A stretch of DNA of 64,000 bases. Origin: Haliotis rubra. Its lineage: Eukaryota. Both the position numbers and the translations under genes were made by a program. A model generated the notes under the pieces. It did not search any database. It was not told where the DNA came from and saw only the letters and a program-made list of their open reading frames with translations. Where the stretch lies: positions 62,001 to 126,000 of the forward strand of contig NW_025767431.1 of assembly GCF_003918875.1 (NCBI RefSeq), read 5' to 3'. Below, piece after piece: positions 5,599 through 59,798 of this stretch (positions within the stretch are counted from its first letter, which is position 1; the number at the start of each line of letters is the position of its first letter).

Positions 5599-7007
5599 AT
5601 GGATCGATTTCTACTGGGGATTCTTGTTGTGACTGTGGTCGTGTCGGTTGAGACAAGGTCAACATGTGGGCGTGGTCAGTTCCTGGACCCAGACTCACAC
5701 ATGTGTGAATACTGTAGCATGGTGTGTGATCACATGGAGATACAGAACACTGCCAGTAAATGCAACAATAATTGTCCAGGTGAGATGTATGAGAGGCTGT
5801 ATCATTACTAGTATCAATATTGATCTTATATATGTCAGTTATGAATGTTTTATCGGATGTATTTATATATACAATGTATCTAGATGTAAATACAATTTAT
5901 GTTCATTAATTGTGATGCATGAAGCAATATACACTCCAATAGGCTCTTGGTCACACGTTACACACAGTCCGTCAACTAACCGGATTAACCGAGTTATTGA
6001 TTAACAGTGTGCTATAAATAACTAAGCTAGACAAGAAAGCATGAATGGATTATAACAACTCTACTGCTTAACCCGGGGAGGTGATCCGACATGTGTGTTG
6101 TTTAACCTGCTTTTCAGCGCAAAGGACGGATTAACCTGAGTGGGTGTGTTTCAACATGCGCCTTGGGATGAACCTAAAACATGGTGGTGAATCTCTTAAA
6201 TGAAAAACACAACTGGACGCTTATTACTTATGTCTACTTCACTGTTTTACTTACAGCTAAACACTGTTAAATCCAAAGCCACTATCATCATATATTATCT
6301 AAGACTATGCTACTTTGTCACCTAGGTCGACACTCGCACATATCTTCGATTGTCACGAGGCATTCAATTTAACTAGGTTTCACTAATTTTAACACAAGGG
6401 AATAAAATTCCCTGTCTTCTTTTAATCACCAATATGTAAGCGAACAGTATGATATATAATTACCTGACCACTATTCACAGATTTCCTTGCAAAGACTACC
6501 TCGACTACAGGATCAACTTGGGTTTCAACGCTTCCAGCTCCAGCTGGTCTGAAAGATGTAGAGACTACATCAAGGACGAATTCACCTTCTAGTCTGGCTG
6601 TGGTCGTACCTGTTGTCTCAATTGCAGCTGTCGTCGTCATCCTTGCTTTATCACTCTACCACAGACAGAGGTTGCACCAGATGTGCTTGAAAGTCCAGTG
6701 TTACTGCCACACCAAACGTCCTGTGCAGGTGGTCGATGGTGGCAATGGTGGACCTGACGACGTCCCAACACCAAATGGTTTGAATATGTATTACGTTGTC
6801 TAATAAGTTGAATACGTTGTGTCAAAGTTGAATATGTTAGGTCATAAGATGAAAACGTTGTGTTATACGTTGAATATGTCAGGTCATAAGATGAAAACGT
6901 TGTGTTATACGTTGAATATGTTCAGTCATAAGATGAAGAAACTTTACTGCGTTGTCATAACCATGGCGATTAAATGTTTCCTCTTTCAAGAGAATAAGCA
7001 TAAGTAG
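5599..7007 (+). CDS. Receptor A1: single-CRD TNF-receptor-like type-I membrane protein (TACI/BCMA/Grindelwald-type)
   Basis: Exon 5599-5779: signal MDRFLLGILVVTVVVSVET + CGRGQFLDPDSHMCEYCSMVCDHMEIQNTASKCNNNCP, phase-1 G|GTGAGA. Exon 6481-6777: ttcacag| S/T stalk, TM VVVPVVSIAAVVVILALSLY, tail with PVQVVD, phase 1. Putative last exon 6991-7007 (ENKHK*) is uncertain; without splicing the frame stops at 6803. Confidence 0.85.
6802..6937. repeat. 42-bp minisatellite in intron 2 of A1 (~3 units)
   Basis: Unit AAAACGTTGTGTTATACGTTGAATATGTTCAGTCATAAGATG. Confidence 0.85.
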
Positions 7008-8203
7008 TCATATGTAAATAAACGATGACAGTGTTCGCGGTAGGAAAAAAAAAGCTTTGCGTTCCTAAATAGCATAGCCCAAGAATTTTTGGGCATGCAC
7101 AGAAGGAGTATGCCCCAACCAGAAAGCGGCGACGTCTCTTGGGGAGTCACTTCCTTGCATTTCAGAGATTGTTGTCATCATTCGTAAATCAAATAAGCTG
7201 AGAAAATGTTTATTTTATTGTTTCCTTGGGGAGCTTATGTACGTTTTTCGGTTACTTGTTCTCAGAACACAAAATGCTTTGCGTGCAGAACACGCAGGTT
7301 TTTTTGCGTTAACGCGAACAAAAATAAATCAGTGATGTATGTGCTACGTCTTTTGCGGCCTCTTCAACGAGCGATATCTCAATGGTCTGATCGTGAATAC
7401 GTTTCCTTCTAGAAATCCTGATGTGTGACGTCACAACGATGGATCGCAACTGACGGTGATCTTCAAAGAAACTATGGAGACATCTTTCACGTTGCATGAC
7501 AGAGGGTCATCTGTGACACAAACAATTCCAGACATTGTATATTTGTGGATCATGGAAATTCTAGGCCACCTGAAGATATTGAAGTACAGTGTCCATGAAT
7601 ACAACGCGAATCATCATCATCATTTTCTTCTTCTTCATGATCATCATAATCATCATCACCACTCGATTCCGATCTCCATATCGTTTTGTATATTTCCTAA
7701 CAAAGAGCTTTTATCTATTCATTCAATTATTGATGTTTGTTCATACAATCAACTTCTTTATTTCTGTAAATAAACAGTTAAAAACAACATAGCGTGTTTT
7801 GTCTTCATTTAATGTGCTAATGTTTCGATAAATCCGCAAAGAAAAGAAATCATTTTTAACTTAACTACCTCCTCGTAGCTAGTCCCACCTGGGAATTACA
7901 CATTTCTAGAAACGGCTACAGTGACCAGCATATCAAACAGACCAACCTTGATGTCAATGGATGGCACAGGTAACGGGATAGATATTCGCCGGATGCATGC
8001 ACACTGTCATTTCCAATATAGCATGTCAATAGTCACCGTTTACATTTGTTATTATCCCCAATCGCGCCTTTAGCGCTAAGCGGGGGGTGTAGTATTAATT
8101 ACTACGTCCGTATGTACGAATTGGAATATCGTAAGAACCATTCACTAGATTCTTTTCATATTTGGTACCTAGGTTCATCACAGTAAAAGAAAGGTCCAGG
8201 TCA

Positions 8204-9724
8204 GCTCTTCTTTTGTAATGTACCACGAAAATAGCTCAGACACATCTGAAGTAAAACAAGGTGTAGGGCAAGGTAGAGTCTTGTCTGCATGGTTCTTCCT
8301 TGTCTCCATAAACGATTTACTATCTGAATGAAGACTAAAGGCCTGTTTATACGGCGACATTTGCACATGTGTATATTTTCGCCGTATAAACAAGCCTTTA
8401 GTAACAATGGTATATGTGTATATGGTATTGATGTACCATCAGTCCTGTTAGCCGATGATACGACACTGTTCAGTACCAATCTGTCTGGGCTGCAGAATTC
8501 ACTTCATATTGTTTCAGAATATGCTTCCAGATGGCGGCTATCATACAATGCATTGAAAAGCACTGTTGTAGTTTTTCGGAAAGGGAAACAATCTTGTCCT
8601 GAGCTCTCATTCTCCCTTTGCGACACCTCTATTAATATACGTCCATCAGTAAAATATGGTGGCATTCTACTCTCATTAGATCTGTCTTGTAATGATAGAG
8701 TTTTCACTAACTGTCAAAAAGGCCATGCAAACCATAAATTCTTTGCGCTCATTGGGTCTTAACAGTACTGACTTACACCCAGGTACATGTGTTAATATAT
8801 GGAAAAGAATGGTTTTACCTACAAGCTTCTATGGTTGTGAAACCATGCCTATGCTATATGGCAAATACATTGATCTGGTGGAAAATACCCAACGATATTT
8901 CACTAAATGTATTCAAGGGTTCAACAGACGTATGCCAACAGATTCTGTATGTGCCAACCTAGGTCTCTGGACAATGGTTGGGTACATTGACAAGTGTAGA
9001 TTATTATTCCTTAGAAGATTATGTAATAACGCTTGTAATTCATCAACGGAAACACTGTCCTGTGCATTTTTAGCACTCACTGTTCACTTAAATATTAGCT
9101 CACGCAGTATTTGCAACACTCTGTTGTGTACAGAACGGAAGTATAATCAATGGAAATTTAGACTCTCCATTAGAGAGGATATGTCCAGATATGCTGTAAT
9201 CCCTCAAACACTGAGTCTACATAGACTTTACACTCTATTGTATCTGTACCCAGAGTATAAAGACCATATACAACTTACTGTACCAGTCGGTTCTAAAGCC
9301 AAATTCTCAAAAGAATGTATGCTTTGTAATAAGTACTGCTATGACCACGATGCCCACATCATTTTGCATTGTGAATCTGTAATGAGCTAAAGATATATTT
9401 TTTTATACGACGCTACTTGACCTACTGGACGTAGATTATATGCATTAATTGAAATGCTTGAAGATGAAGATGCCATTGTACTGTTTTGTGGTGCAAAACT
9501 TCACATCCCTGGCCTTCATGAAACGGCATGGCAAACCATCATACTACATTTTTCGAACTATATCTATTCTTTAAATGATTCCTTGATGTATACTTTCTGA
9601 ACTATCATTGTTGTAAATAACCGTGCTTTGTACATATCATATGTACATATATGTAACTGACTGATGTTTGTTTATGTAATCTTCGAATATACTTTTGGAG
9701 GAAATAAAGACATTCATTCATTCA
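8204..9724 (+). mobile_element. 5'-truncated CR1/L2-like LINE (RT C-terminal part to (CATT)n tail), frameshifted
   Basis: RT motifs KQGVGQGRVLS and LLADDTTL, then WRLSYN..KS. Frameshift near 8720. Same 3' end and 3' flank as 1570-2609. Confidence 0.88.
8338..8398. mobile_element. 61-bp hairpin MITE with TA target duplication, inserted in the LINE RT
   Basis: TA|AAGGCCTGTTTATACGGCGA...TCGCCGTATAAACAAGCCTT|TA. Confidence 0.7.
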
Positions 9725-14300: not shown

Positions 14301-14474
14301 GTTACTTAAAGTCAGGATCGTGTGTGACTATTTGTTACTTAAAGGCAGGATCGTGTGTGACTATTTGTTACTTAAAGGCAGTATCGCGTTTGGCTATTTG
14401 TTACTTAAAGGCAGGATCGCGTGTGGCTATTTGTTACTTAAAGGTAGGATCGTGTGTGGCTACCTGTTACTTAA
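11330..14474. repeat. 33-bp satellite, left part of the large array (~95 units)
   Basis: Tandem AAAGGCAGGATCGTGTGTGGCTATTTGTTACTT variants. Confidence 0.97.
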
Positions 14475-28600: not shown

Positions 28601-29790
28601 TTAAAGGTAGGATCGTGTGTGGCTATGTGTTACTTAAAGGTAGGATCGTGTGTGGCTATGGTTACTCAAAGGTAGGATCGTGTGACTATTTCTTACTTAA
28701 AGGCAGGATCGCGTATGGCTATTTGTTACTTAAAGGGAGTATCGTGTGTGACTAGTTGTTACTTAAAGGCAGGATCGTGTGTGGCTATTTGTTACTTAAA
28801 GGCAGTATCGCGTTTGGTCATTTGTTACTTAAAGGCAGGATAGCGTGTGGCTGTTTGTTACTTAAAGGTAGGATAGTATGTGACTATTTGTTACTTAAAG
28901 GCAGTATCGCGTATGGCTATTTGTTACTTAAAGGTAGGATCGTGTGTGGCTATGTGTTACTTAAAGGTAGGATCGTGTGTGGCTATTTGTTACTCAAAGG
29001 TAGGATCGTGTGACTTTTTCTTACTTAAAGGCAGGATCGCGTATGGCTATTTGTTACTTAAAGGGAGTATCGTGTGTGACTAGTTGTTACTTAAAGGCAG
29101 GATCGTGTGTGGCTATTTGTTACTTAAAGGCAGTATCGCGTTTGGTCATTTGTTACTTAAAGGCAGGATCGCGTGTGGCTATTTGTTACTTAAAGGTAGG
29201 ATCGTGTGTGTCTATTTGTTACTTAAAGGCAGGATCGCGTATGGCTATTTGTTACTTAAAGGCAGGATCGTGTGTGGCTAGTTGTTACTTAAAGGCAGGA
29301 TCGTGTAGTGACTATTTGTTACTTAAAGGCAGTATCGCGTTTGGCTATTTGTTACTTAAAGGCAGGATCGCGTGTGGCTATTTGTTACTTAAAGGTAGGA
29401 TCGTGTGTGGCTATTTGTTACTTAAAGGCAGGATCGTGTGTGGCTATTTGTTACTTAAAGGCAGGATCGTGTATGGCTATTTGTTACTTAAAGGCAGGAT
29501 TCGTGTATGGCTATTTGTTACTTAAAGGCAGTATCGCGTTTGACTATTTGTTACTTAAAGGCAGGATCGTGTGTGGCTATTTGTTTCTTAAATGCATGAT
29601 CCTGTGTGGCTATTTGTTACTTAAAGGCAGTATCGTGTGTGGCTATTTGTTACTTAAAGGTAGGATCGTGTGTGGCTACCTGTTACTTAAAGGCAGGATC
29701 GTGTGCGGTTATTTGTTACTTAAAGGCAGTATCATGTGCGGCTAGTTGTTACTTACAAGCAGTATAGCGTGTGTCCTACTTGTTGCTGAA
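16636..29790. repeat. 33-bp satellite, right part of the large array (~400 units)
   Basis: Same unit. Highly homogeneous core at about 24.7-27.3 kb, with variant-rich flanks. Confidence 0.97.
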
Positions 29791-30249: not shown

Positions 30250-30458
30250 TGCTTACTTAAAGGTAGGATCGTGTGTGGCTATTTGTTACTTAAAGGCAGG
30301 ATCGTGTATGGCTATTTGTTACTTGAAGGCAGGATCGTGTGTGGCTATTTGTTACTTAAAGGCAGTATCGTGTGCGGCTATTTGTTACTTAAAGGCAGTA
30401 TCGTGTGCGGCTAGTTGTTACTTACAAGCAGTATACCGTGTGTCCTACTTGTTACTGA
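30250..30458. repeat. 33-bp satellite, short array (~6 units)
   Basis: Same unit, with the same head and tail sequences as the other arrays. Confidence 0.9.
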
Positions 30459-32245: not shown

Positions 32246-33739
32246 ATGGATCGATTTCTACTGGGGATTCTTGTTGTGACTGTGGTCGTGTCGGTTGAGA
32301 CAAGGTCAACATGTGGGCGTGGTCAGTTCCTGGACCCAGACTCACACATGTGTGAATACTGTATCATGGTGTGTGATCACATGGAGATACAGAACACTGC
32401 CAGTAAATGCAACAATAATTGTCCAGGTGAGATGTATGAGAGGCTGTATCATTACTAGTATCAATATTGATCTTATATATGTCAGTTATGAATGCTTTAT
32501 CGGATGTATTTATATATACAATGTATCTATATGTAAATACAATTTATGTTCATTAATTATGATGCATGAAGCAATATACACTCCAATAGGCTCTTGGTCA
32601 CACGTTACACACAGTCCGTTAACAAACCGGATTAACCGAGTTATTGATTAACAGTGTGCTATAAATAACTAAGCTAGACAAGAAAGCATGAATGGATTAT
32701 AACAACTCTACTGCCTAACCCGGGGAGGTGATCCGACATGTGTGTTGTTTAACCTACTTTTCAGCGCAAATGACGGATTAACCTGAGTGAGTGTGGTTCG
32801 ACATGCGCCTTGGGATGAACCGAAATCATAGTGGTGAATCTCTTAAATGTCTACTTCACTGTTTTACTTACAGCTAAACACTGTTAAATCCAACGCCACT
32901 ATCATCATATATTATCTAAGACTATGCTACTTTGTCACCTAGGTCGACACTCGCACATATCTTCGATTGTCACGAGGCATTTAACTAGGTTTCACAAATT
33001 TTAACACAAGGGAATAAAACTCTATCATCTACTGCCTCCTGTAATGTGCTGTCGTCTTTTAATCACCAATAAGTAAGCGAACATTATGGTATATAATTAC
33101 CTGACCACTATTCACAGATTTCCTTTCAAAGACTACCTCGACTACAGGATCAACTTGGGCTTCATCGCTTCCAACTCCAGCTGGTCTGAAAGATGTAGAG
33201 ACTACATCAAGGACGAATTCACCTTCTAGTTTGGCTGTGGTCGTACCTGTTGTCTCAATTGCAGCTGTCGTCGTCATCCTTGCGTTATCACTCTACCACA
33301 GACAGAGGTTGCACCAGATGTGCTTGAGTGTCCAGTGTTACTGCCACACCAGACGTCCTGTACAGGTGGTCGATGGCGGCAATGGTGGACCTGACGACCT
33401 CCCAAGACCAAATGGTTTGAATATGTATTACGTTGTCTAATAAGTTGAATATTGAATGTTAGGTCATAAGATGAAAACGTTGTGTTATACGTTGAATATG
33501 TTCAGTCATAAGATGAAAACGTTGTGTTATACGTTGAATATGTTCAGTCATAAGATGAAAACGTTGTGTTATACGTTGAATATGTTCAGTCATAAGATGA
33601 AAACGTTGTGTTATACGTTGAATATGTTCAGTCATAAGATGGAAACAACATGTAGGTTTTCTATATGTTAAGTATGTGAGAAACTTTACTGCGTTGTCAT
33701 AACCATGGCGATTAAATGTTTCCTCTTTCAGGAGAATAA
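32246..33739 (+). CDS. Receptor A2: near-identical paralog (or allele) of A1
   Basis: Exons 32246-32426 and 33118-33414; putative last exon 33732-33739 (tttcag|GA GAA TAA, GE*). CRD differs from A1 by one residue (S>I); exon 2 differs by 8 residues. Confidence 0.85.
33440..33645. repeat. 42-bp minisatellite in intron 2 of A2 (~5 units)
   Basis: Same unit as 6802-6937, with more copies. Confidence 0.9.
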
Positions 33740-34877
33740 GCATATTAAGTAGTCATATATAAATATACTATGAAAGTGTTCGCGGTAGGAAAAAAAGCTT
33801 TGCGTTCCTAAATAGCATAGCCCCAAGAATATTTGGGCATGCTGAGCAGGAGTATGCCCGAGCCAGAAAGCGGCGACGTCTCTTGGGGAGTCCGGGGTCG
33901 TCACGTCACTTCCTTGCATTTCAGCGATTGTTGTCATCATTCGAAAATCAAATTAGCTGAGAGAATATTTTTTTATTGTTCCCTTGGGGAAATTGTGTAC
34001 GTTTTTCGGTTACTTGTTCTCAGAACACAAAATGCTTTGCGTGCAGAACACGCAGGTAGCAAACACGCAGGTTTTTGCTTTAACGCGAACACTGAATCAA
34101 TGATGATATAATAATTATATAAATTGATTATTCAAAGAGGGATATAAATAAGTGCTGTATGTGCTACGTGTTTCGCGGCCTCTTCAACGAGCGATATCTC
34201 AATGGTCTGATCGTGAATACGTTTCCTTCTAGAAATCCTGATGTATGACGTCACAACGATGGATCGCAACTGACGGTGATCTTCAAAGAAACTGTGGAGA
34301 CAGCTTTCACGTTGCATGACAGAGGGTCATCTGTGACACAAACAATTCCAGACATTGTATATTCGTGGATCAGGGAAATTCTAGGCCACCTGGAGATAAT
34401 GAAGTACAGTGTCCATAAATACAACACGAATCATCATCATCATTTTCTTCTTCTTCATGATCATCATGATGATCATCATCATCCGATTCTGATCTCCATA
34501 TCATTTTGTATATTTCCTAACAAAGTGCTTTTATCTATTCATTCAATTATTGATTTTTGGTCATACAATCAACTTTTTAATTTTTGTAAATAAACAGTTA
34601 AAAACAACGTGGCGTGTTTTGTCTTCATTTAATGTGCTAATGTTTCGATAAGTCCGCAAAGAAAAGAAATCATTTTTAACTTAACTACCTCCTTGTAGCT
34701 AGTCCCACCTGGGAATTACACATTTCTAGAAACGGCTACAATGACCAGCATATCAAACAGACCAACCTTGATGTCAATGGATGGCACAGGTAACGTGATA
34801 GATATTCGCCGGATATACATGTATGTACACTGTCATTTCCACTTTAATATAGCATGCCATTGTCACCGTTTACATTT

Positions 34878-36403: not shown

Positions 36404-39400
36404 ATGTCGTGCCAACGCTCTGCTATTCTGGTTCTGCTGATTTTGACCAATGTGGCACTGGACCCTGTTTGCAGGGAGGACCAGTACTATGATGTACATG
36501 CAGGGATGTGTGAGTATTGCTCCATCATATGTCAACATGCAGAGATCCAAGGGACGGTGGAGAAGTGTGGGAGGAACTGTCCAGGTAAATTATGTGTTAC
36601 TGTACAGAACCGTAAAACTGTCCAGGTAAATTATGTGTGACTGTACAAACCGTAAAACTGTCCAGGTAAATTATGTGTTACTGTACAGAACCGTAAAACT
36701 GTCCAGGTAAATTATGTGTTACTGTACAGAACAGTAAAACTGTCCAGGTAAATTATGTGTTACTGTACAGAAACGTAAAACTGTTCAGGTAAATTATGTG
36801 TTACTGTACAGAACAGTAAAACTGTTCAGGTAAATTATGTGTTACTGTACAGAAACGTAAAACTGTCCAGGTAAATTATGTGTTACTGTACAGAAACGTA
36901 AAACTGTCCAGGTAAATTATGTGTTACTGTACAGAACAGTCAAACTGTCCAGGTAAATTATGTTACTGTACAGAACCGTAAAACTGTCCAGGTAAATTAT
37001 GTGTTACTGTACAGAACAGTCAAACATCCATACAAATATAGTCGCGATGAAATTGGCTGCTAGTTTATTTGACTTTGTTTTTCTCTACCTCCTTAAATCA
37101 TATGTTGTCGGCATTAAACTATATCCAGTCAATTTCTGACATAACTTGTTTCCTTGTCTGGAAACAAAACCTTGATCACCTTCATGATCAAGAAAGAAAC
37201 TCGTTTCTCCCAGTCGGGACGTTGCAGTGAATGATTCCATCTATTCCTGCACTGCCGGAAGAATAGTTGCGATTAAGATATAGTTAAACTAAAGACATGC
37301 TTATTGACTCTTAGTTTGCCGTATTGCAACATGCATCCCAGGAAGTCTGGTTGCAGAACATTCACTTCGACTTTCACGTTTTGTGATTGGATGAGAGCAA
37401 CCACGTGACAACACAGAGTACCATGAACGATCTATTTGTTCTAAATGCTTATGAATCAGAATGCGGATGAAATCTCACAAGATTAACCTTCTGGTTTGTG
37501 ATTGGTTAACAGCGATCACGTGGTGCAGATATTCAAGATTAATCTTGTCACGTGGCCTGGATGAATAACATAAGATTAACCTGAAAGCGTGACATAGTAC
37601 GCATGGACTTTAGTGAAATCATTATCATATCTACAAAACTGTTGTTACTGTAATGTTATCATGTAATCAACGAGTACGTATACCCATTAAGAACGATTTT
37701 GACTGCACTGGTATGACACATACTTCAGTAAATCCAACACAACATTTGGGCCTTGTCAAACGCTGCAGCGGATTAATCTCGCAACTGGAAAGTCCATGTT
37801 TTATATTTAGAAGCAGCCTTGAGCGGTTAACCGCACAAGGAAGGAAACGGTTTTTTTCGCTTCCAGTAAAGTTACTTTGTGAATTTAACAGTATCGAGAA
37901 TTCTCTCAGGTTATGATGGCATAGATGAAGAATTGTCCACAGAAATAGAAATATATGTAAGAAGTGACTCTGTGGTTTAATGTTGAGTATTAAGGCCTGA
38001 AGCTAGAATGGGAAAATTGATAGAATAGCGGTGGGTTTGCTAAATTTCTCGCCGTTAGTTTGCTTCAAATGTGCTGAACATTTTCGAAAACATAGACTGA
38101 CTTCGATATTTTTGCGGTGATATTGCTGGAATAATGCTATAAGCGGCGTAAAACTAAAACTCACTCACACACTCGATATGTTTTCTTTAAGTTGCTGTGA
38201 TCAAAACCAGTTTACACAACGGTNNNNNNNNNNNNNNNNNNNNNNNNNNNNNNNNNNNNNNNNNNNNNNNNNNNNNNNNNNNNNNNNNNNNNNNNNNNNN
38301 NNNNNNNNNNNNNNNNNNNNNNNNNNNNNNNNNNNNNNNNNNNNNNNNNNNNNNNNNNNNNNNNNNNNNNNNNNNNNNNNNNNNNNNNNNNNNNNNNNTG
38401 TTTCTGACCCTAAGGATATGTCACCACTAAGGCCACGAAGACATCGTCAACAACGGCGTCTTTGTCGTCTCCATCGCTACCCTCACCATCATCATCAGGC
38501 TGGTTACCCTGGCAGACATCCCTTGTCACCCTCACATCAGTTGTAATCACAGGTTGTGTCACGGCGCTTGTCGTCGCCAACAGAGAGTCAGTCAGGCGGT
38601 GTATTAGACGGACCCGAAACACGTGTAACCATGGCAACCACGCGCTGTATCCTGTGGAAGGAGGCACCCATGGTTCAGAATGTACGTTACGTTGGGTGTA
38701 CCCAAATTCGTTTTTCAGAGTTTGTTTTGCAACTAATTCTTTGCATTATCCAGAACACTAAACTTTCCAAATATTAGCGAGAGACTGAATGGGTGAGTGA
38801 GCATAGTATATAAAGGTGAGGTGAGGTGAGGTGAGGTGAGATGAAATTGGGTTTTACGTCGTGCTGAGAATATCCCATCATATGACGACGTGCATGCGTG
38901 TGTTTGTGTATGTGCGGCTGCTTGTACTAGCCCAGACTTAAGCTGGTTTTATAGTGCTAGCCATGAATACCCTACTCAGACACATTATACTGACTCCGAG
39001 CCGACCAGTCCTTGTTGTATCCATTAATGCCGAGCGCCAGGCAGGGGCCAACAAGTACCATATTTTAACATCTTTTGGTATGACGCGGTCGGGGATTGAA
39101 CCCGCGACCTTCCGCTCTCCGGGCGGACGCTCTAACCACTACACCACGGAGGCGGTCAGTATATTAAGAACTTATTTGAGCAAAATCGCAGTGAGGTAAC
39201 CAGAAATGGGCTTTACATTGTTCCCAGTAGGGCATCGAACTCAAGTGACTAACGAACACCTCAACCACTAGGCTAACCCACAGTGCCTATATACATACAG
39301 GTAAGCGTGGTTTGATGTACCACTACTTAGGACGTTATTTCATTAATCCGAGCATGTCAGTTGATTTCGGAGGAAGGCCCGGTTTGACCAAACCTGCTTA

Positions 39401-39790
39401 TTATAACCATTGCCATAGTCTGTCTCACAGTCCCTGAACCACATTATTTACCCTACTGCTAATCTGAATCTCTGGTCTCCCTGGGACTCCTTTTCCATTT
39501 ATATGGGTTTGTTTGTTATACTATCAAAATTATATATATTCAGAGACTGAGCGTTAGTCTACCATTGCCACTGCCCAACACGAACGCACGGTTGTTAGAT
39601 AAAGAGACCTAAGGGAAGCAACTCCCTTAGATAAATCAGTGTCTGGACCATCTCTGGTACGAGAATTAAAAGACTTGTAACAGAAGCAATAAAGGTAAAT
39701 CATGTTGTATGAAATGCTGCAAACAAACACATTTGACATATTTCAATCTGTCTTGCAGATACCATGGTAACCGAGCAAGAGAGAGTTTAA
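36404..39790 (+). CDS. Receptor B: single-CRD TNFR-like type-I membrane protein
   Basis: Exon 36404-36584: signal + CREDQYYDVHAGMCEYCSIICQHAEIQGTVEKCGRNCP, phase 1; 181 nt as in A and E. Exon 38415-38681: GYVTTKATKTSSTTASLSSPSLPSPSSSG stalk, TM WQTSLVTLTSVVITGCVTALVVA, donor T|GTACGT. Exon 39759-39790: tcttgcag|, YTMVTEQERV*. Intron 1 spans an assembly gap. Confidence 0.82.
36575..37024. repeat. 41-bp minisatellite (11 units) containing the exon-1 splice donor of B
   Basis: Unit AACTGTCCAGGTAAATTATGTGTTACTGTACAGAACCGTAA. Confidence 0.92.
38224..38398. other. Assembly gap (175 N)
   Basis: Run of N ending 16 nt before exon 2 of B. Confidence 1.
38815..39157 (-). mobile_element. tRNA-derived SINE, nested in an older SINE
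   Basis: Reverse strand begins GACCGCCTCCGTGGTGTAGTGG (A box) ...GGTTCAATCC (B box) and ends in a (CTCAC)n tail. Inverted copy at 44049-44398. Confidence 0.85.
39416..39561. mobile_element. MITE with 9-bp TSD (Mutator-like), copy 1
   Basis: TSD CCATTGCCA at 39407-15 and 39562-70. Imperfect TIR TAGTCTGTCTCACAGTCCCTGAA / TTCAGAGACTGAGCGTTAGTCTA. Confidence 0.8.
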
Positions 39791-43093: not shown

Positions 43094-43096
<3 letters not shown>

Positions 43097-43119
43097 TATA
43101 TATATATATGTATATTTAT

Positions 43120-46407: not shown

Positions 46408-46486
46408 TTACATGAATGAATACATATTACGTCATGAACGAAACTAGAATTTCCATGAGAAACCGAAAATAAAACTACCCAGCAAA

Positions 46487-49400
46487 ATGGTGGCACATGC
46501 CACGTTATTAATTCTTCTTCCTTGTCTGGGGAGAATTGCCTGTGTCCAAGGTAATTATATACGTTCAAGAATAACTTTGTAAACATTAATTCAGATTAAG
46601 ATTTTTTGTTGTATAGAAAGACACAGTCAGTGTTACATTAACCCTATCTGTGTTGTTGTGAGGGTGTACCAAGGTAGGAAAGATACACCACAATGTATTA
46701 CGTATCTGTTACCAGTGGTAGGTCGACTGTTAAATATGAAACGTTCACGAACTGTAACATGTATTCTTGAACATACACGTGTGGAACACTTGAACAATCA
46801 GACACTGACGAAATGACATATACCTCACTGTTTATCATACCCCTCATAAACGCTATAATCATATTGAATAACCATTACGTACTTACGTTGCTTTTCTGAA
46901 TTTTCATTATATATCAGTAAACTATTTAGTACTTTGAATATAAAAGATAAACGATCCGTATAATTTGACATTTCGTAATCGGACCTCAATAAGCTATTGA
47001 TACATATTTATGGATAGTTGTACTGGCTCCTTGTCATTCACTCGGTGCAATGGTTCACAGTCTTGTCGGTTTATTATTGTTGTTTTGCTATCATTTCTCA
47101 TAATGGCATGGATTATAACTGACATGAAATGTTCCAGTGTGTCCCCGAGACTTCTATTACAGCACCGACACCGACAGGTGTGAAAGCTGTGCAGAATTGT
47201 GCCACCAAGCAACGGTCAGAAAAACAGAAAGTACATGTCGAAGACTGTGTCCCGGTGAGACGTCTCAAAGCATCCAACATCCAACCTCGATCTTAAAGTG
47301 AAAGTGCAATTAACCGTATTCATTAACAAACATCCCTCAACGATAATATATCCGTCACTTTTTTATATGTATCACAAATGCAATTTGTATATTGACAATA
47401 ATATGTGTTATGAAATAGGGATATGTTCATTCAGTTTAGATAACTACAATACAAGACATTATGTTGAGTATTGTAACATTTTGTTGATGTCCTGCAACAC
47501 ACTGTGTAGCGGCCACAAAATTTCCGAGTCCAGTGCTGGGATTCGAACCCCGGACCTTCTGATCCCAAGTCGGACGCCTTGTACACATGTCCAAACAGGT
47601 TAACCCTGTCGGCAAGCTGAGAAGGTAAGGATGTCATCTGTGGGATGACTCCACACTACCAGAGATCATATAATATGGTATCTGACACTACACACTGTGC
47701 TCTCTACCTGTTTATCATTTGTAGTGAGATGTTTGTGTCTTCAGTGGTAAGTGACACATGGTGTTTGTGTTTGTAGTAGGAGACACAGAAGTAACAAAGA
47801 CGTCCTTGACACTGAAGAAAGCGTTACATGGCAACAACACGCCATCAGTGAACAAACTGAACTCAACTGAAGAACGGTTACCACACACACTGGACGACAG
47901 TCAAGGTAATCTGGCGTTACATTTAAGTAAATCCTATCTATTAATCCGGAAGATAATATTGTCATCTGAATATTTTAATCCGGAAGAAACACCAGTCTCC
48001 TGTTGTCATCTCTTTGGGGTGTTTTGATTTACGTGGATGTACGCATTCTGATTCACCTTTTAGCATACTTTTCACTGACAGTTTTAGGCGTTTCGTAGCT
48101 CGTGAGTTGTTACCCAGACTAACATATAATCCCAGAAGTAAAGTTATCGTATCTAAAGATCAGCCTGGATCAGACAATGTCGAAGCGTAGCGCAACACAC
48201 CCCAGGTACCAGGCTGATCTAAACATGTCCTTGGAAACTGGTTTTACACAGTAACATAATCATGTCGGCGAGCAAACCGGACTTTAACTGTCCTTTCCCG
48301 ACATAATTGGTAAAATTACAACTGCTATAGTCACAATATGTTTGAAAGACTGCCACCTTTGGCAATGTTCATGAATCATTACGAAACAGTGAACACTTGT
48401 TCCAGATATAGATGGGAATGTAGGCACGAGAGCTGAAATCACCCCTGTCATTCAGTCAGTTGACTGTGTACCCCTTTTACTTGTAATTGTACAACTATAT
48501 TTTGAGTAAAAGTAAATATTCTCGCCAATGGGCCAAATGTTTTCCGGCCATGGGCGAGATATTTTAACATCGCTCTAAATTAGCCAAATCAAGTCAAAAT
48601 GAGTTGAATTTGTGTCATGATACTTATATACATACTTTCGTTTATTTACAACCTCCAACAAATGAATTCTGAGCGAAACTAAACATTCTCGCCCATGGGT
48701 TTAAATTTTGATTTTTCGAGAAATAAATGTTTCATTTTTTCATCCTTTTCATATATTCATGACAACTGCATGTTTTATTCGTCAAATCCTTTCTCAGAAA
48801 GGGGCCACAGTGCGGAGAGTTTCTGGACTTTTGTGAGTCCAGAATTAAATTGTGACGTGTTAATATATTTCAGTTACCATATACACAGTGTGTACGTTAA
48901 TGTTGCTCATCATGATCATGTGCTGTGTATCGGCTGTACTTCTAATGTCTGGACGATATCCATCTTGCTGCTGCTGTAAACGAAGAGCACTTTGTTTGAA
49001 GTATCGAAGGACCGGAAGTGGAGGTAAGATCGATTACCAACCATGAGTAGTCACAAGTCTTGCCTACTCTGCATTCATGATCAGCTCTGAGACAGTAATG
49101 CATGATAACAGATACGAAAACATAATCAAATATAGTAATCGTTACTCCGGTGTCCAGTTAATGTCCCTTAGAAAGATATGTGTAAATGAGTAAATATATT
49201 CTGTTGAATATATATGGCTGATCAAGCTGGTTTGGCTCTTTGCCAACAGAGAGCCCTTCACACGCAGCCAAGAGAACAATGTGTGTTTTTTCATCAAAAT
49301 GTAAATAGGAAATGTTATGCAATGAAGTAATGAGACTGTCTAACACCTAGTGGATGCCGCATAGTATATATACCTTTGAGACATGGTGGCCTGGTTTGGT

Positions 49401-49810: not shown

Positions 49811-49845
<35 letters not shown>

Positions 49846-53344: not shown

Positions 53345-55050
53345 ATGGTTGTCATGGTAGCTCCAGATTGTCATCCTTTGATCTAGCAGGTAGGTAGTGT
53401 GAAACAGGTACCAAGCATGTGTGATAACACAACTAAGAAGTGGTTGTACAGGTAGTTTCATGATTGTCATCAGTGGATCTAGCAGGTAAGTAGTGTGAAA
53501 CAGGTACCAAGCATGTGTGATAACACAACTAAGAAGTGGTTGTACAGGTAGTTTCATGATTGTCATCTGTGGATCTAGCAGGTAGGTAGTGTGAAACAGG
53601 TACCAAGCAGTGTACCACATCATGTGTGATAACACATCTAAGAAGTGGTTGTAACAGGTAGTTTCACATGATTGTGGTTGTCAGTGGATTGTAGCAGGCG
53701 ATAGCAGGTAGTGAAACAGGTACCAAGCATGTGTGATAACACATGTAAGAAGTGGTTGTACAGGTAGTTTCATGATTGTCATCAGTGGATCTAGCAGGTA
53801 GGTAGTGTGAAACAGGTACCAAGCATGTGTGATAACACATCTAAGAAGTGGTTGTATAGGTAGTTTCATGATTGTCATCTGTGGATCTAGCAGGTAGGTA
53901 GTGTGAAACAGGTACCAACCAAGCATGTGTGATAACACACATCTAAGAAGTGGTTGTATAGGTAGTTTCATGATTGTCATCTGTGGATCTAGCAGGTAAG
54001 TAGTGTGAAACAGGTACCAACCAAGCATGTGTAATACCACATCTAAGAAGTGGTTGAACAGGTAGGTTCATGATTGCCATCTGTGGATCTAGCAGGTAGG
54101 TAGTGTGAAACAGGTACCAAGCATGTGTGATAACACATGTAAGAAGTGGTTGTAGGTAGTTTCATGATTGTCATCAGTGGATCTAGCAGGTAAGTAGTGT
54201 GAAACAGGTACCAAGCATGTGTGATAACACATCTAAGAAGTGGTTGTATAGGTAGTTTCATGATTGTCATCTGTGGATCTAGCAGGTAAGTAGTGTGAAA
54301 CATACCAAGCATGTGTGATAACACATGTAAGAAGTGGTTGTATAGGTAGTTTCATGATTGTCATCTGTGGATCTAGCAGGTAAGTAGTGTGAAACAGGTA
54401 CCAAGCATGTGTGATAACACATGTAAGAAGTGGTTGTACAGGTAGTTTCATGATTGTCATCTGTGGATCTAGCAGGTAAGTAGTGTGAAACAGGTACCAA
54501 GCATGTGTGATAACACATCTAAGAAGTGGTTGTACAGGTAGTTTCATGATTGTCATCAGTGGATCTAGCAGGTAAGTAGTGTGAAACAGGTACCAAGCAT
54601 GTGTGATAACACATCTAAGAAGTGGTTGTACAGGTAGTTTCATGATTGTCATCAGTGGATATAGCAGGTAAGTAGTGTGAAACAGGTACCAAGCATGTGT
54701 GATAACACATGTAAGAAGTGGTTGTACAGGTAGTTTCATGATTGTCATCAGTGGATATAGCAGGTAAGTAGTGTGAAACAGGTACCAAGCATGTGTGATA
54801 ACACATCTAAGAAGTGGTTGTACAGGTAGTTTCATGATTGTCATCAGTGGATATAGCAGGTAAGTAGTGTGAAACGCAGGGTGCATGTGTGATAACACAA
54901 CAGAAGTGGTTGTACAGGTAGTTTCATGATTGTCATCAGTGGATCTTGCAGGTAAGTAGTGTGAAACAGGTACCAAGCATGTGTGATAACACAACTAAGA
55001 AGTGGTTGTATAGGTAGTTTCATGATTGTCACCAGTGGATCTTGCAAGTA
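53345..55050. repeat. 96-bp minisatellite (~18 units)
   Basis: Unit CAGGTAAGTAGTGTGAAACAGGTACCAAGCATGTGTGATAACACATCTAAGAAGTGGTTGTACAGGTAGTTTCATGATTGTCATCAGTGGATCTAG. Confidence 0.95.
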
Positions 55051-56891
55051 CGTACAGTGAAACAGTTACTCTGCATGTGGAACAATGATCCGTGTACCAT
55101 AAATAACATCGAATCACACATGTGTAACTATCTGGGGGACCGGGCAACAACACGTCAACATTGATTCCAGAAATACACCTCTGTCTATGCTATAATGCCA
55201 ATGTCGTAATCAACTCACAATAACATACGTTCTGGTACTGCCATGTTCCCTGGCACTCTCAGGGACAGAAACGACGGTCTGTAGAGACTGGGGATATACG
55301 TGCGATGGCTGACTCTAGGTCCTCGTGTCCAGATAGGAAAACAGGACATTATACCAGGACTGTTCATGAGGTGTCACAAAGGTGATCATTCAGAGGTACG
55401 TCAACCATTGATTGGGTTGTACAGAACTTTAGCTATCATACAATACCTATGTTTTCAACTACGTGACAGACCTATGGGCTGTCGTCAGTCAGAGTTGGTG
55501 AAGATAGTTAACCTTTTCAACTTCTAAAAGAAGTATGTCTGGATCCATACTTCTTCATGCATTTCATTGTTTGCTATATAGAATTAAATGTAAATGTGAA
55601 GATTATATTTACAACAACATAGATATGTATCGGGTCCTGTCTGCATCAAAGAGAGTTGTGACCATCGTCCCTTACCACTGACCTCATACATTTACATTGT
55701 ATATAGCAGTGCAGATGGACTGTGAGACATTATTTTATTTTAAATCTCTCTTACGATAAAAACAGTAAAGAAACTCGAAAGATAACACGAGTTGCTTATT
55801 GTAAGTATATAGAATTTAAAAATATGGTCACAAAGTACACAGATACTACAAAGTATATGTACATGTACAACTGACCTACCCTGTGTTGACAGGATAAATC
55901 TGTCGCCAACACATCACTACTTTATCATGATTCAGTAATTCAGGATATACCCGGACATGTATAATGGCTTTTAGAAATAGGGATTTTGTGTATGGTTGGC
56001 GAAAGGGGCTTGTGGCTAATAGAACATTGATTCAGATGATTCCAATACATAAAGTTTAGGTGCTATTTGATTACACACAATTAAGAATTACCAAACAGCT
56101 AAAAGTATGTTTGATGATAGTTGATTTAAAGTATTGAAAACAGACAGACAGACACACAGACATTAACAAAGGCAATAATGAATTTATGGGCAGCATATAA
56201 CGCTCATCTTTCCGCGAACACCAAGTATCATTTACTGTAGACTGAATATGTTATTTACTGTAGACTGAGTATATCATCTACTATAGATGAAGTATATCAC
56301 TGACAGCTGATGAAAGATACCGTTTACTATTATCATGCGTATACATAGCAGATATTATCTGCTGTAGATGGAGTATATAATTTACAGTCGTAACTGTAGA
56401 TGAATAGCTTATTGAATGAATTACATGTTGTAGATACAGACAATAGATGGAGTATATTATATTACTGTAAATGGAATATTTCGTTAACAAAAGACTGACA
56501 ATAACATGTACTGTACACTAACTAAATTTATGTATGCAAGGACTGTTAGTCAGTCACTAATGCAATTTAAGATTACATAGCAGGCCATACTATCAGGCGC
56601 ATACCATTGAAACTTTGTGCATAAGTTGCAAAGCTTTATGCGCAGATCCCGAGGGTTTGCATTTTAGCAAGTACACCGTCAAGCCCGGGCTTCATCTGGT
56701 AGCTACGCTGCATAGGAAACTGCGTGATTCACGCGCACATCCCGTGTTCATTCATAAAGTTCAGCGCATTGTCAGGTCACGTGATTCACCGCTCATTGCG
56801 TATGGCCCAGTCTATCGTCGGGCGCTCCACACTCGTGTTATCGATGTCACTTGTGTATCGCGTACATATCTCCTAGTGAAGTAACAGATGA

Positions 56892-59798
56892 ATGGATATA
56901 ATAGTACTAGTACTACTGAGTGTGTGTGGTCAGGTAGTGTCTGTGACACTGCGACAGTGTCCGGACTCGTCTGTGTGGAGCGTTGACTTGCACGACTGTG
57001 TGCCTTGTAAGGAACTATGTGGACGTGGGAGTAAGTACATGTAATACTACGTTTCACCTGTTTTGATTTCTTGTAATATGTCCATATACGTGATTGGACA
57101 TCTGGATATGTGTGAATTATTAGGCGTGTATGTCGCATGTGAAAATGTTAACGCCCTAATGTGGGTTGGGTAGCCTAGCGGTTACAGCTCTTCGCTTGTC
57201 ACGCCGAAGGTCCGGTTTCGAATCCCAACATGGGTACAATGTGGTGTCACCCGCCATGATATTTCTTGAATATTGCTAACGAATACATAAAACCATGTTC
57301 ACTCATTACTGGTTCCTTATTGCATACATTTAAAAGGCCCCAACACCCTTTCCCTAATCATAAACAATGCGCACGTGTTTACATTCGTTTTGAAAACTTT
57401 CCTTTAACCTGTTATAGAATAGACGTAAAACAATCCGAGATGTGTCGGCCTCGGTTGGTGTTCCAATGGATCACGTGTAATGTTAGTTGTAACATAACTA
57501 CAAGTGTAGGCTTGGCAAGAAACAATCACCATAGTTCCTACAGGGCATCCCACACACACCGGCTCAGCGATGACTTAACATAACACCACTGCCACAGGCA
57601 AATTTGCATATCACGTGACCGGACTTTTCTCTTGTTTGTAATCAAACGCGCATATTCATAATAAGAAGAGACTGGACTCACGAAAGCTTTTCGGCGCTCT
57701 CTTCATAATGTTTTACATTGTTACATATATATTCTTCCACAACTGCGACAGTAAGGTCTATGACAGTACATATTTAGATATCAAACTGGCTGCATCGTTT
57801 GCTCTCCATCAGCCTCGATGACAGCACGTGGAGCCGTACAACCTATGTAAACAAAGGATCGCTACGCAAATCGAAATAGTGTTACATGTTTTAGGATATT
57901 TTCTCAATGAAACTAAACCATTCTATCAAAGATGTTTGATTAGTTGTGTAGACTCGTCAAAAATAAAAGAGTTGAGAAATATGTAAATTATATTGAATGG
58001 ACGGTGCAAGATGTGACGAATCGTCACATTTTTCTGGCCTGTGGCAGAGATACTATGCTGGCTTGTCGCATGGAACTCTGGGTAGAGAGTGAGCATCCCA
58101 GGTACAAAGTACACAGGAAACGTACACGTAGAATGGCAAAATGCTGTCCTCGGGACACACCTGAAACTTCCGCGTCTAAAAATAGCGCATACGTGTTTAT
58201 AGTGAATGCGCGGGCGTTGGCAAATGGTAAAGACTCCTGAAGCTCTAAATGTATATCTACATTGACTATCTGTGCTGCTTGGGAATAATATTGAGCTGCT
58301 CCTCATCTTAACAAATTGTGGTTGAATGTATGGGGAGAGTCCATTTAGAGTACATGTCTTGTCAGCAAGCTAGTTCTTGAATCTGAGGGAAAGCACAAGA
58401 TCCATGTGACACTCGTACACTCACAGCACTAAAATATTAGTCTTTGTCATTCATTCATTGTCTTTGTCATTCATATTTTCTTTCATTCATTCATTTGCCA
58501 GAAAAAGATACAGCCAGTTCACCTCAGAAGTCCCAACAATTCCGTCGACATGGAAACGGCAGACATAAACGCGATGATTATGATTGTGGCGACTTCAACT
58601 ACTACGACCCCGCCATACACGGATGTACGCCGTGTGACCACCTGTGTGACTACCACGAACACCAAGGAACTACAAAGCGTTGCATGGAGAAATGTCCAGG
58701 TAGTATGTCTTCGTGGTACCTATAGCTTCATGTTAAAGTTACGTAAAACATTTTCTTCTGAAATAAGCATGTTCTAATTTATAGATAATATATAGATACT
58801 TTTTACGAGTATTATGTGTATATGCAAAGTATATTGAAAATCATCCCCAGGTCATTCCGATTTCTTTAATTGACCATAAGCGTTATAATAGGTTGTTATA
58901 TATATGTAAATACTAGTTAACAGTAGTGAACAGGCATGGCTATTTTTGCGTGTTAACAGATTACTATGTAAAGGATGGGACCTACGGCCAGTTCACAAGA
59001 AGAGAGGTCTACAAAGGATACGAGTCCTGATGATTCCAAAGGAGACGCTACCTTGACTGTAGTATTGATTATATTTGCGATAGTGTTTGTCCTGTGTACT
59101 GGCGTTATGGTTTGGAAACGGAATCAGATTTGGCAGTTCCTGGAGAGACAGTGTACAACCGATGAGGAGAAAACCTCGGTGCCATGCTGCCAGGAACAGG
59201 GAATCTGCGAGTCTGCCAATTCCAAAGTGAGTAGTAGTTAGTTTTGTTATACTTGGGGGAGGACAAAAACCTATGATCGTGGGTTCGAACCTTAAACTGA
59301 CCTGCACTAACTGTACCAAGGTCTGTCTGGACCATACCCAATGTGAGTGTAAGACATGAACAAATGTGTACCGAAACTGAAACTGTAGTAATCTTGACTT
59401 GGCACACATTCTAGACCTTCTGTATTAGGTATATTTGATTCAGGGTCAGTAGGACAGTCGATATATTCTTGAGAACTTTTAATTTATGAATTTCAGCCCC
59501 TTTGACCCACTCCCTAGGACCAATATGCCAGCCAGTTACAGAAACTCGCCACGAGAACAAAGCAGACCAGTACCTATACACAGAGACGTTTGCTGAGATT
59601 GACCTACGGTATGCTGTATTGGATGAACCGTTCTCACAGACCACAACACCATCCCTAAACAAACCTGTTCCACGGATCACCCCAGTCAGACTGCCTCCAT
59701 CTATCACCCAACCATCCCTAAACAAACCTGTTGCACGGATCACCTCAGTCAGACCCTCTCCAACTATCAACCACCCCAACGCAAACCGTATCTGCTGA
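56892..59798 (+). CDS. Receptor D: TNFR-like protein with one partial and one complete CRD; frameshifted as assembled
   Basis: Exon 56892-57030: MDIIVLVLLSVCGQVVSVTLRQCPDSSVWSVDLHDCVPCKELCGRG, A|GTAAGT. Exon 58502-58699: linker ending RHKR + CGDFNYYDPAIHGCTPCDHLCDYHEHQGTTKRCMEKCP. Exon 58960-59226: DYYVKDG, an extra base near GGG 58977-79, then stalk and TM LTVVLIIFAIVFVLCTGVMVW. Last exon from 59497, ending PL* at 59505 or, in another phase, a Pro-rich tail to 59798. Confidence 0.72.

What the first reader, a model, noticed from the sequence alone, without database searches (positions are those of the whole stretch)
6715..59625. Divergent cytoplasmic tails suggest paired activating and inhibitory receptors
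Seen: A1/A2 tails contain PVQVVD. The B tail, formed across the 38681/39759 junction, reads SEYTMV. The long D tail frame contains PVTET and LRYAVL. C has a juxtamembrane CCCCKRR. Known: PxQxxD is the minor TRAF2-binding consensus, PVQET is the CD40 TRAF site, (S/I/V/L)xYxx(I/V/L) is the ITIM consensus, and juxtamembrane Cys clusters are often palmitoylated. Inference: one ectodomain scaffold is coupled to TRAF-recruiting versus phosphatase-recruiting outputs. Short motifs occur by chance, so this is tentative.
Basis: partly seen in the sequence, partly recalled or inferred. Interest (0 to 1): 0.7.

Follow-up and report, generated by a model that had tools for sequence, protein, structure and literature searches.

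The report
Abalone mini TNF-receptor tail motifs
Six neighbouring blacklip-abalone genes encode small TNF receptors of the fly Grindelwald / human BCMA type; the short tail motifs are really there and the TRAF-type docking box is a feature of the whole family, but nothing supports paired activating and inhibitory receptors.

Summary
All five motifs sit at the stated coordinates.

Spliced RNA contigs and two orthologs confirm the D tail frame. They also show that the assembly has four small indel errors in D, so the window's D frame is wrong after about 59630.

The genes belong to an expansion of at least 51 modules of single-CRD TNF receptors. An exhaustive PDB fold search returns only Grindelwald, BCMA, Fn14 and TACI.

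- **TRAF box:** TRAF1/2/3/5 docking consensus occurs in 23 of 72 family tails, against 9.2 expected. A's PVQVVD is therefore probably a real TRAF box.
- **PVTET:** it fails that consensus.
- **ITIM-like matches:** they are not enriched. B's has no relative to test.
- **D's LRYAVL:** it is part of an old, conserved tyrosine box. That box sits beside a TRAF box in the same tail in a relative.

Ectodomains differ widely (A versus B 49%), and the one near-identical pair, A1/A2, has the same tail. The paired-receptor reading is therefore not supported.

This scan has already reported the same family, TRAF boxes and an ITIM-like tail on neighbouring DNA of this genome.

The parts
5599..5779 (+). A1 exon 1: signal peptide plus six-Cys CRD
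   Evidence: 98% identical to P0001 residues 1-60.
6481..6777 (+). A1 exon 2: stalk, TM and tail, with PVQVVD at 6720-6737
   Evidence: Colinear with the RefSeq A2 model.
7413..7453 (+). A1 last exon (EILMCDVTTMDRN, stop).
   Evidence: Copy of the A2 exon that the RefSeq model uses.
32246..32426 (+). A2 exon 1 (signal peptide plus CRD)
   Evidence: Identical to P0001 = LOC124259279.
33118..33414 (+). A2 exon 2: stalk, TM and tail, with PVQVVD at 33357-33374
34233..34273 (+). A2 last exon (EILMYDVTTMDRN, stop)
   Evidence: The joined translation equals P0001 exactly.
36404..36584 (+). B exon 1 (signal peptide plus CRD)
   Evidence: Model equals P0006 = LOC124259301.
38224..38398 (.). Assembly gap, inside B intron 1
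   Evidence: A TAA at 38411-13 in the TM frame separates it from exon 2.
38415..38681 (+). B exon 2: stalk, TM and tail; ends ...GSE plus the first base of Tyr
   Evidence: No other copy in the genome.
39759..39790 (+). B last exon ((Y)TMVTEQERV, stop). SEYTMV spans 38675-38681 plus 39759-39769.
   Evidence: This is a RefSeq model only; I could not check it against RNA.
46487..46550 (+). C exon 1 (signal peptide)
   Evidence: Colinear with H. asinina P0019.
47138..47254 (+). C exon 2 (CRD)
47777..47905 (+). C exon 3 (stalk)
48874..49023 (+). C exon 4: TM plus CCCCKRR (48966-48986). Donor GGAG|gtaaga; the last exon was not found.
   Evidence: The H. asinina ortholog has RYCCKRR.
56892..57030 (+). 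D exon 1: signal peptide plus four-Cys first module
   Evidence: The RNA contig piece ends at 57030 and joins 58502. Orthologs have 10 more residues here, including two Cys.
58502..58699 (+). D exon 2: RHKR site plus full CRD
   Evidence: RNA contig piece 58502-58699.
58960..59226 (+). D exon 3: stalk, TM and start of tail. Assembly indels at 58969/70 (one letter too many) and in the A run 59224-26 (one A too few).
   Evidence: tables 3, 4 and 8.
59497..59880 (+). D exon 4, coding part: PVTET at 59532-46 and LRYAVL at 59604-21. Assembly indels at 59630/31 (-2) and 59769 (+4). The stop codon of the frame set by run X1's differences is at 59878-80.
   Evidence: RNA contig piece 59497-59959. With X1's differences the ORF is 329 aa and colinear with orthologs.
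62164..62346 (+). E exon 1 (signal peptide plus first module). The gene continues past the window's end. Outside the finding's range.
   Evidence: 72% identical to H. asinina P0005. The next CRD is at contig 126114-126236.

Best explanation
The window holds six + strand genes (A1, A2, B, C, D and the start of E). They belong to a large abalone expansion of small type I membrane receptors whose single cysteine-rich domain has the Grindelwald/BCMA/Fn14/TACI fold.

They most likely bind members of the equally expanded abalone TNF ligand family. This is inferred.

Where the tail keeps it, they most likely signal through a TRAF1/2/3/5-type docking box, Px(Q/E)E or Px(Q/E)xxD, about 12-40 residues below the membrane. 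A's PVQVVD is one such box. Binding itself is inferred.

Tails follow a loose common plan: a proline box, then in some lineages a tyrosine box (L-[RK]-Y-[AP]-x-[LV]; in D, EIDLRYAVLDEPL).
- A keeps a consensus TRAF box.
- B has PVEGG and D has PVTET at a similar distance from the membrane. Neither fits the TRAF consensus, and the tails are too short and too diverged to show that these sit at the same position as A's box.
- C has only a short tail with a cysteine cluster that is probably palmitoylated.

The tyrosine box is conserved, but its partner is unknown. Because Y-x-x-hydrophobic is also the endocytic sorting signal, and Grindelwald must be internalised to signal, I rank sorting above phosphatase recruitment.

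The genes are diverging paralogs, not activating/inhibitory pairs.
For: **Species and gene models**
- A2, B and D match RefSeq proteins of Haliotis rubra on one 556,514-bp contig.

**Family**
- A profile of the six CRDs finds 155 proteins at E <= 1e-3. Every one I looked up is from a gastropod and unnamed.

**Fold**
- The AlphaFold2 model has pLDDT 82.6: a hairpin followed by helices.
- Against 48,161 PDB representatives, only five chains reach Z >= 2: Grindelwald 4.8 (44 residues aligned), BCMA 3.9 and 3.0, Fn14 3.0, TACI 2.5.
- The Foldseek top ranks name the same set.
- Profile against PDB sequences: TACI E 0.0012, BCMA 0.015, Grindelwald 0.09.
- The spacing C-x3-C-x11-C-x3-C equals Grindelwald's C2 module (PMC8024323).

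**Genome**
- At least 51 CRD matches, most on the window's own contig.
- At least 33 TNF domains.
- Six TRAF MATH domains, one of them TRAF2/3-like.

**Tails**
- TRAF consensus (PMC6125299) occurs in 23 of 72 tails, against 9.2 in shuffles (0 of 2000 as high) and 8 for the mirror pattern.
- PxQxxD alone: 9 against 1.3.
- The tyrosine box recurs in Haliotis, Nucella and Gigantopelta: 3 against 0.014 expected. This pattern was chosen after looking.
- D blocks NSKTPLTHSLGPICQP and EIDLRYAVLDEPL are invariant in three Haliotis species.

**Expression**
- D is expressed as a spliced four-exon mRNA.
Against: - No Pfam TNFR model reaches its cut-off. All matches to solved TNFRs are weak in absolute terms (Z < 5, E >= 0.001), as expected for a 45-residue domain.
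- No ligand or TRAF binding has been shown. The one complex prediction (TRAF2/3-like MATH domain with the A2 tail) gave no answer.
- A and B have no detectable ortholog in other annotated abalones and no further paralog.
- A1 and A2 have diverged almost neutrally: pN/pS 0.86, with intron divergence equal to pS. A and B may therefore be young, drifting copies.
- The shuffle test ignores shared ancestry among tails.
- I did not check expression of A, B or C.
Confidence: 0.6

Rival explanations
1. One reading: the cluster is a paired system in which one ectodomain scaffold feeds TRAF-recruiting (A, D) and phosphatase-recruiting (B, D) outputs.
For: - Motifs are present.
- B's junction matches RefSeq.
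- LRYAVL is conserved in three species and as IPYTEV in the E type.
- ITIM signalling has been reported in an oyster receptor (PMC11841013, abstract).
Against: - Ectodomains are 32-49% identical. The only near-identical pair shares its tail.
- No TM segment carries a charged residue.
- ITIM matches are not enriched.
- TRAF and tyrosine boxes sit together in one tail.
- PVTET fails the consensus (PMC6125299).
- B's motif has no relative to test.
Confidence: 0.06
2. Only the D/E subfamily carries a true ITIM. A TNFR-type receptor would then recruit a phosphatase after tyrosine phosphorylation, with no pairing involved.
For: - EIDLRYAVLDEPL is invariant in three Haliotis species. E has EICIPYTEVDGP. 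Both fit (S/I/V/L)xYxx(I/V/L).
- The box is old.
- Oyster ITIM precedent (PMC11841013).
Against: - The same residues fit the YxxPhi sorting signal. Internalisation is needed for Grindelwald signalling (PMC8024323).
- To my knowledge, no TNFR is known to use an ITIM.
- An earlier follow-up in this scan, on a neighbouring gene (s1-335118), rated an inhibitory paired receptor rather unlikely and noted that a tyrosine in that tail is normally a phenylalanine. I did not test this.
Confidence: 0.12
3. The motifs in A and B are chance matches in young, drifting duplicates that have no signalling role (decoys or dying genes).
For: - pN/pS 0.86 between A1 and A2.
- No orthologs or further paralogs.
- Window-only chance values are about 0.05.
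- In A1 the tyrosine of the last exon is a cysteine.
Against: - Family-wide enrichment of the TRAF box.
- A's box differs from Gigantopelta's by one residue.
- The only change inside PVQVVD between A1 and A2 is synonymous.
- Reading frames and splice sites are intact.
Confidence: 0.2

Closest known systems
Drosophila Grindelwald (PDB 6ZSY/6ZT0; PMC8024323)
   Same: - Single CRD made of a hairpin plus a C2 helix-loop-helix, with C-x3-C-x11-C-x3-C spacing.
- Best structural match (Z 4.8, 44 of 48 residues aligned).
- Type I membrane protein whose tail binds Traf2.
   Different: - About 25% identity.
- The abalone hairpin keeps the Tyr/Phe-x-Asp of BCMA/TACI, which Grindelwald lacks.
- Dozens of copies rather than one.
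- Tails are unrelated in sequence.
Human BCMA, TACI (CRD2) and Fn14
   Same: - Small single functional CRD and short tail.
- Signal through TRAF boxes of the Px(Q/E)E type.
- A profile of the abalone CRDs hits TACI at E 0.0012 and BCMA at E 0.015.
   Different: - The helical half is longer: 11 residues between Cys4 and Cys5, against 7-8 in my reading of BCMA/TACI.
- The Leu of the DxL ligand-binding hairpin is not kept.
- Pfam models for these families are not reached.
Grindelwald-like homologs surveyed across invertebrates (bioRxiv 10.1101/2024.07.27.603686)
   Same: The same kind of receptor is reported in molluscs (oyster, scallop) and annelids, with lineage-specific expansions.
   Different: - The largest expansion reported there is 12 paralogs, in Capitella. 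H. rubra has at least 51 CRD matches.
- In the passages I read, tails and their motifs are not analysed.
Vertebrate paired receptors (KIR, SIRP, PILR and similar; my own knowledge)
   Same: Clustered, fast-evolving receptor genes with differing tails.
   Different: True pairs have near-identical ectodomains. The activating partner has a short tail with a charged TM residue for an ITAM adaptor. Neither is seen here.

Membership tests
Small single-CRD TNF receptors (Grindelwald/BCMA/TACI/Fn14 type) | Six-Cys CRD: hairpin module plus helix-loop-helix module with nested disulfide spacing C-x3-C-x11-C-x3-C | tested here: met
   Five Cys invariant and the sixth in at least 90% of 62 members. The model shows a hairpin then helices. 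Spacing equals that given for Grindelwald in PMC8024323.
Small single-CRD TNF receptors (Grindelwald/BCMA/TACI/Fn14 type) | Fold matches solved members and nothing else | tested here: met
   Only 5 of 48,161 chains reach Z >= 2, and all five are Grindelwald, BCMA, Fn14 or TACI. Absolute Z is low (2.5-4.8).
Small single-CRD TNF receptors (Grindelwald/BCMA/TACI/Fn14 type) | Significant sequence match to the curated family models | tested here: inconclusive
   No Pfam hit over cut-off. The best was BCMA-Tall_bind at E 7e-4, below the gathering score, on a relative. Profile against PDB: TACI E 0.0012.
Small single-CRD TNF receptors (Grindelwald/BCMA/TACI/Fn14 type) | Type I topology: signal peptide, ectodomain, one TM, cytoplasmic tail | tested here: met
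   Hydrophobic leader and one TM segment after the CRD in A, B, C and D. Based on a hydropathy scan only.
Small single-CRD TNF receptors (Grindelwald/BCMA/TACI/Fn14 type) | Binds a TNF-family trimer | not testable with these tools
   At least 33 TNF domains are in the genome. No pairing was attempted.
Small single-CRD TNF receptors (Grindelwald/BCMA/TACI/Fn14 type) | DxL motif at the hairpin tip (BCMA/TACI/BAFF-R) | tested here: inconclusive
   Asp is present in at least 90% of members. The Leu position is variable.
TRAF1/2/3/5 docking site | Px(Q/E)E, Px(Q/E)xxD or Px(Q/E)xT in an accessible tail (PMC6125299) | tested here: met
   This holds for A only: PVQVVD fits Px(Q/E)xxD. Family enrichment is 23 of 72 against 9.2. 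B (PVEGGT) and D (PVTET) do not fit. Binding is not shown (one search gave no answer).
Paired activating/inhibitory receptors | Near-identical ectodomains joined to different tails | tested here: not met
   CRD identity to A: B 49%, C 32%, D 37%. A1 and A2 are near-identical, but so are their tails.
Paired activating/inhibitory receptors | Activating partner has a charged TM residue for an ITAM adaptor | tested here: not met
   The TM segments of A, B and D have no charged residue.
Paired activating/inhibitory receptors | Inhibitory partner has a conserved ITIM | tested here: inconclusive
   D's match is conserved. B's cannot be tested. There is no family-wide enrichment.

The most novel reading that the evidence does not exclude
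The conserved tyrosine box of the D/E subfamily (EIDLRYAVLDEPL / EICIPYTEVDGP) is a working ITIM. Some mollusc TNF-type receptors would then recruit an SH2 phosphatase. To my knowledge, that output is unknown for any TNF receptor.
Probability: 0.1. Interest if true: 0.7.

Novelty: new member of a known kind. Interest (0 to 1): 0.3.

Why it matters
- **Signalling:** abalone, a farmed mollusc with recurrent disease problems, has dozens of mini TNF receptors. Many of their tails carry the docking box that human CD40, Fn14 and LMP1 use for TRAFs, which gives a concrete, testable route from the expanded TNF ligands to NF-kB/JNK.
- **Immune receptor claims:** an attractive short-motif reading (paired receptors) dissolves once relatives are compared.
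- **Annotation:** RefSeq LOC124259265 is truncated to 185 aa. Homopolymer and other small indel errors in the assembly break a gene that reads and orthologs show to be a 329-aa receptor.

Tried and rejected
- **Complex prediction** of the TRAF2/3-like MATH domain (L003) with the A2 tail: 'no answer' (scores 0.47, 0.00, 0.00). This counts neither for nor against binding.
- **Pfam** on single exons and on ten family members: nothing over cut-off.
- **The look-up of encoding contigs** for P0001: nothing on record.
- **Word-based protein searches** with A exon 2, B (P0006) and a D ortholog (P0010) gave no orthologs for A or B. They see only proteins of 0.55-1.75 times the query length, so longer or shorter relatives cannot be excluded.
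- **Own-genome searches** with B exon 2 and A exon 2 found only themselves.
- **BLASTP of B against the neighbouring gene product P0014** aligns the CRDs only. A by-eye likeness of ...TMVTEQE to ...VVMTEQE was therefore dropped.
- **One TRAF review** (PMC3697994) did not contain the motif strings. PMC6125299 did.
- **tRNA scan:** ARAGORN found no tRNA gene, so I do not call the high-copy repeats tRNA-derived.
- **Reads for A and B:** I could not lay reads on these genes because the single read-laying run went to D.
- **Joined exon models:** none of my own joined models was sent to a search tool. Exons were searched singly by reference, and spliced proteins only as database ids returned by the tools. 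Joined translations were made only inside local scripts to compare frames with those proteins.

Full report
**The gap first**

The N run is at 38224-38398. It lies between B exon 1 (36404-36584) and B exon 2. In the frame that encodes B's stalk, TM and tail there is a TAA at 38411-38413. The acceptor AG is at 38413-14. Exon 2 therefore starts at 38415 and cannot extend into the gap. Exon 1 ends in phase 1 (CCAG|gtaaat), and exon 2 completes that codon. The joined model equals RefSeq LOC124259301 (P0006, 159 aa). The gap thus sits in an intron of the accepted model. Whether the flanks are continuous, or whether a small alternative exon hides in the gap, cannot be known.

**The observation**

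The organism is an abalone. My three-exon A2 model is letter for letter 'uncharacterized protein LOC124259279 [Haliotis rubra]' (P0001). B and D also have RefSeq models on the same 556,514-bp contig. The window is contig C2541, 62001-126000.

*Gene A.* A1 and A2 are a recent segmental duplicate. They show 15 differences in 519 coding bases, 3.3% in intron 1, and pN/pS 0.86. Their PVQVVD is therefore one observation, not two. It splices after ...RPN into a 41-nt exon (A2 34233-34273; A1 7413-7453). The motif lies upstream of that splice and stays.

*Gene C.* Four exons are colinear with H. asinina P0019. The cysteine cluster directly follows the TM. The ortholog has RYCCKRR. The last exon was not found.

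**Gene D and the reads**

As assembled, D cannot be joined into one frame. After the CRD exon the frame hits a stop before the TM. The strong donor at 59227 leaves the tail exon out of frame. RefSeq therefore annotates only a 185-aa protein that starts at Met 58975 and uses a weaker donor at 59230 (P0152).

I laid four runs on 56800-60000.
- Two RNA-like runs cover only the exons and show zero depth in the unique parts of the introns.
- One 1159-nt contig lies on 56809-57030, 58502-58699, 58971-59226 and 59497-59959. That is a spliced four-exon mRNA.
- Both DNA runs show one letter fewer at 58969/70, and the RNA contig that spans exons 2 and 3 (X9) has ten letters where the window has eleven.
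- Both DNA runs show an extra A in the run 59224-26. The RNA contigs carry one extra letter at that joint.
- All four runs show two letters fewer at 59630/31.
- Three runs (X1, X4, X9) show four more letters behind 59769.

With the differences from the best DNA run, the four exons give one 329-aa frame. It is colinear end to end with the H. asinina ortholog (78% identity) and the H. cracherodii ortholog (69%).

Conclusions for D:
- The rest of the window's frame (…TTPSLNKPVPRIT…) is an assembly artefact.
- The first module of D really lacks ten residues, including two Cys, relative to orthologs. The RNA joint 57030/58502 confirms this.

**What the genes are**

Pfam finds nothing. A profile of the six CRDs finds 155 proteins at E <= 1e-3 among 1.8 billion representatives. 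Every one I looked up is an unnamed gastropod protein, from Haliotis, Gigantopelta, Nucella or Babylonia.

Fold evidence:
- A 62-sequence alignment gave an AlphaFold2 model with pLDDT 82.6: a hairpin followed by short helices.
- An exhaustive alignment to 48,161 PDB representatives returned only five chains with Z >= 2: Grindelwald (Z 4.8, 44 residues), BCMA (3.9 and 3.0), Fn14 (3.0) and TACI (2.5).
- Foldseek ranks the same set first, without significance.
- The sequence profile reaches TACI at E 0.0012.
- The language-model look-alikes are mollusc clusters and TACI/BCMA/BAFF-R/Fn14.
- The Cys spacing of the helical half equals that described for Grindelwald (PMC8024323).

Grindelwald-like receptors in molluscs have been surveyed in a preprint (10.1101/2024.07.27.603686). 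The genome holds at least 51 CRD matches, most of them on this contig between 9.7 and 393 kb. It also holds at least 33 TNF domains and six TRAF MATH domains, one of them TRAF2/3-like.

**The tails**

Within the window alone the motifs are marginal. By shuffles of the four tails, p is about 0.05 for PxQxxD and about 0.04 for two ITIM matches. I therefore extracted 72 non-redundant tails from family members that have one TM after the CRD.

*TRAF box.*
- The TRAF1/2/3/5 consensus of PMC6125299 (Px(Q/E)E, Px(Q/E)xxD, Px(Q/E)xT) occurs in 23 tails.
- Shuffles give 9.2 +/- 2.8, with none of 2000 reaching 23. The mirror-image pattern occurs in 8 tails.
- The box lies a median of 28 residues from the membrane.
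- Instances include PVQET, PVEET, PIQET and, in Gigantopelta, RPTQVVD, one residue away from A's RPVQVVD.
- A's box is thus very probably a real, inherited docking box.
- D's PVTET has Thr where the consensus demands Gln or Glu. It varies among orthologs (PETEA, PATET). B has PVEGGT, which also fails.

*ITIM-like matches.*
- They occur in 9 tails against 5.2 expected, and 119 of 2000 shuffles reach that.
- D's match is nevertheless not noise. EIDLRYAVLDEPL is invariant in three Haliotis species, and the E type has EICIPYTEVDGP.
- L-[RK]-Y-[AP]-x-[LV] recurs in Nucella and Gigantopelta: 3 against 0.014 expected. This pattern was chosen after looking.
- In Gigantopelta it shares a 41-residue tail with the TRAF box. 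The two boxes are therefore parts of one tail plan, not alternative outputs.
- B's SEYTMV has no relative at all.

**Paired receptors**

- CRD identity to A is 49% (B), 32% (C) and 37% (D).
- The only near-identical ectodomains, A1 and A2, carry the same tail.
- No TM segment has a charged residue.

The defining features of paired receptors were tested and not met.

**Mechanism**

- *Shown:* the fold class, the membrane topology by hydropathy, the expression and splicing of D, and the enrichment and conservation of the motifs.
- *Inferred:* binding of TNF trimers, TRAF recruitment by the proline box, sorting (or SH2 docking) by the tyrosine box, and palmitoylation of C's cysteine cluster.

A complex prediction of MATH domain with A2 tail gave no answer.

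**Relation to earlier notes**

After reaching this reading I looked up the scan's notes. Neighbouring stretches of the same contig had already been reported as clusters of the same receptor kind, with TRAF-type motifs and with an ITIM-like tail judged unlikely to be inhibitory. They agree with what I found independently here.

Exons were searched singly by reference. Spliced proteins were used only as ids returned by the tools. Joined translations were made only in local scripts.

Noticed in passing
58969-58970, 59224-59226, 59630-59632, 59769: Four small indels in the assembly relative to the DNA and RNA-like runs laid. They break gene D, so RefSeq LOC124259265 is cut to 185 aa and given a wrong C-terminus.
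   Followed up: yes
11333-29773 (also 3379-3987 and 30253-30461): An 18.4-kb satellite with a 33-bp unit (about 560 copies, strong GC skew) lies between A1 and A2. Shorter arrays of the same unit lie upstream of each copy.
   Followed up: no
36575-37025: A 41-bp tandem repeat (11 copies) starts in the last codons of B exon 1. It repeats the exon-intron junction AACTGTCCAG|GTAAAT, giving 11 look-alike splice donors.
   Followed up: no
6803-6937 and 33456-33646: A 42-bp tandem repeat lies just after the read-through stop of A1 and A2, with different copy numbers (3.2 and 4.5).
   Followed up: no
53346-55069: A 96-bp tandem repeat, about 18 copies, lies between C and D.
   Followed up: no
57121-57334, 57549-58083, 59903-60000: Very high-copy repeats in D's intron 1 and 3' flank. 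Summed contig depth is up to about 900,000, against about 130 for unique sequence.
   Followed up: no
126-2275 and 8328-9390: Retrotransposon-like open frames (endonuclease/reverse-transcriptase type). A roughly 220-aa frame is present twice (1610-2275 and 8692-9390).
   Followed up: no
56892-57030: D's first module has four Cys. Orthologs in H. asinina and H. cracherodii have ten more residues with two further Cys. The RNA joint 57030/58502 shows the short form is real.
   Followed up: partly
62164-62346: Start of a sixth gene (E), of the D type: a first module here and a second CRD just past the window's end. Its H. asinina ortholog has IPYTEV in the tail.
   Followed up: partly
7413-7453 vs 34233-34273: The last exon of A2 has a tyrosine (ILMYDVT) where A1 has a cysteine (ILMCDVT).
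   Followed up: no
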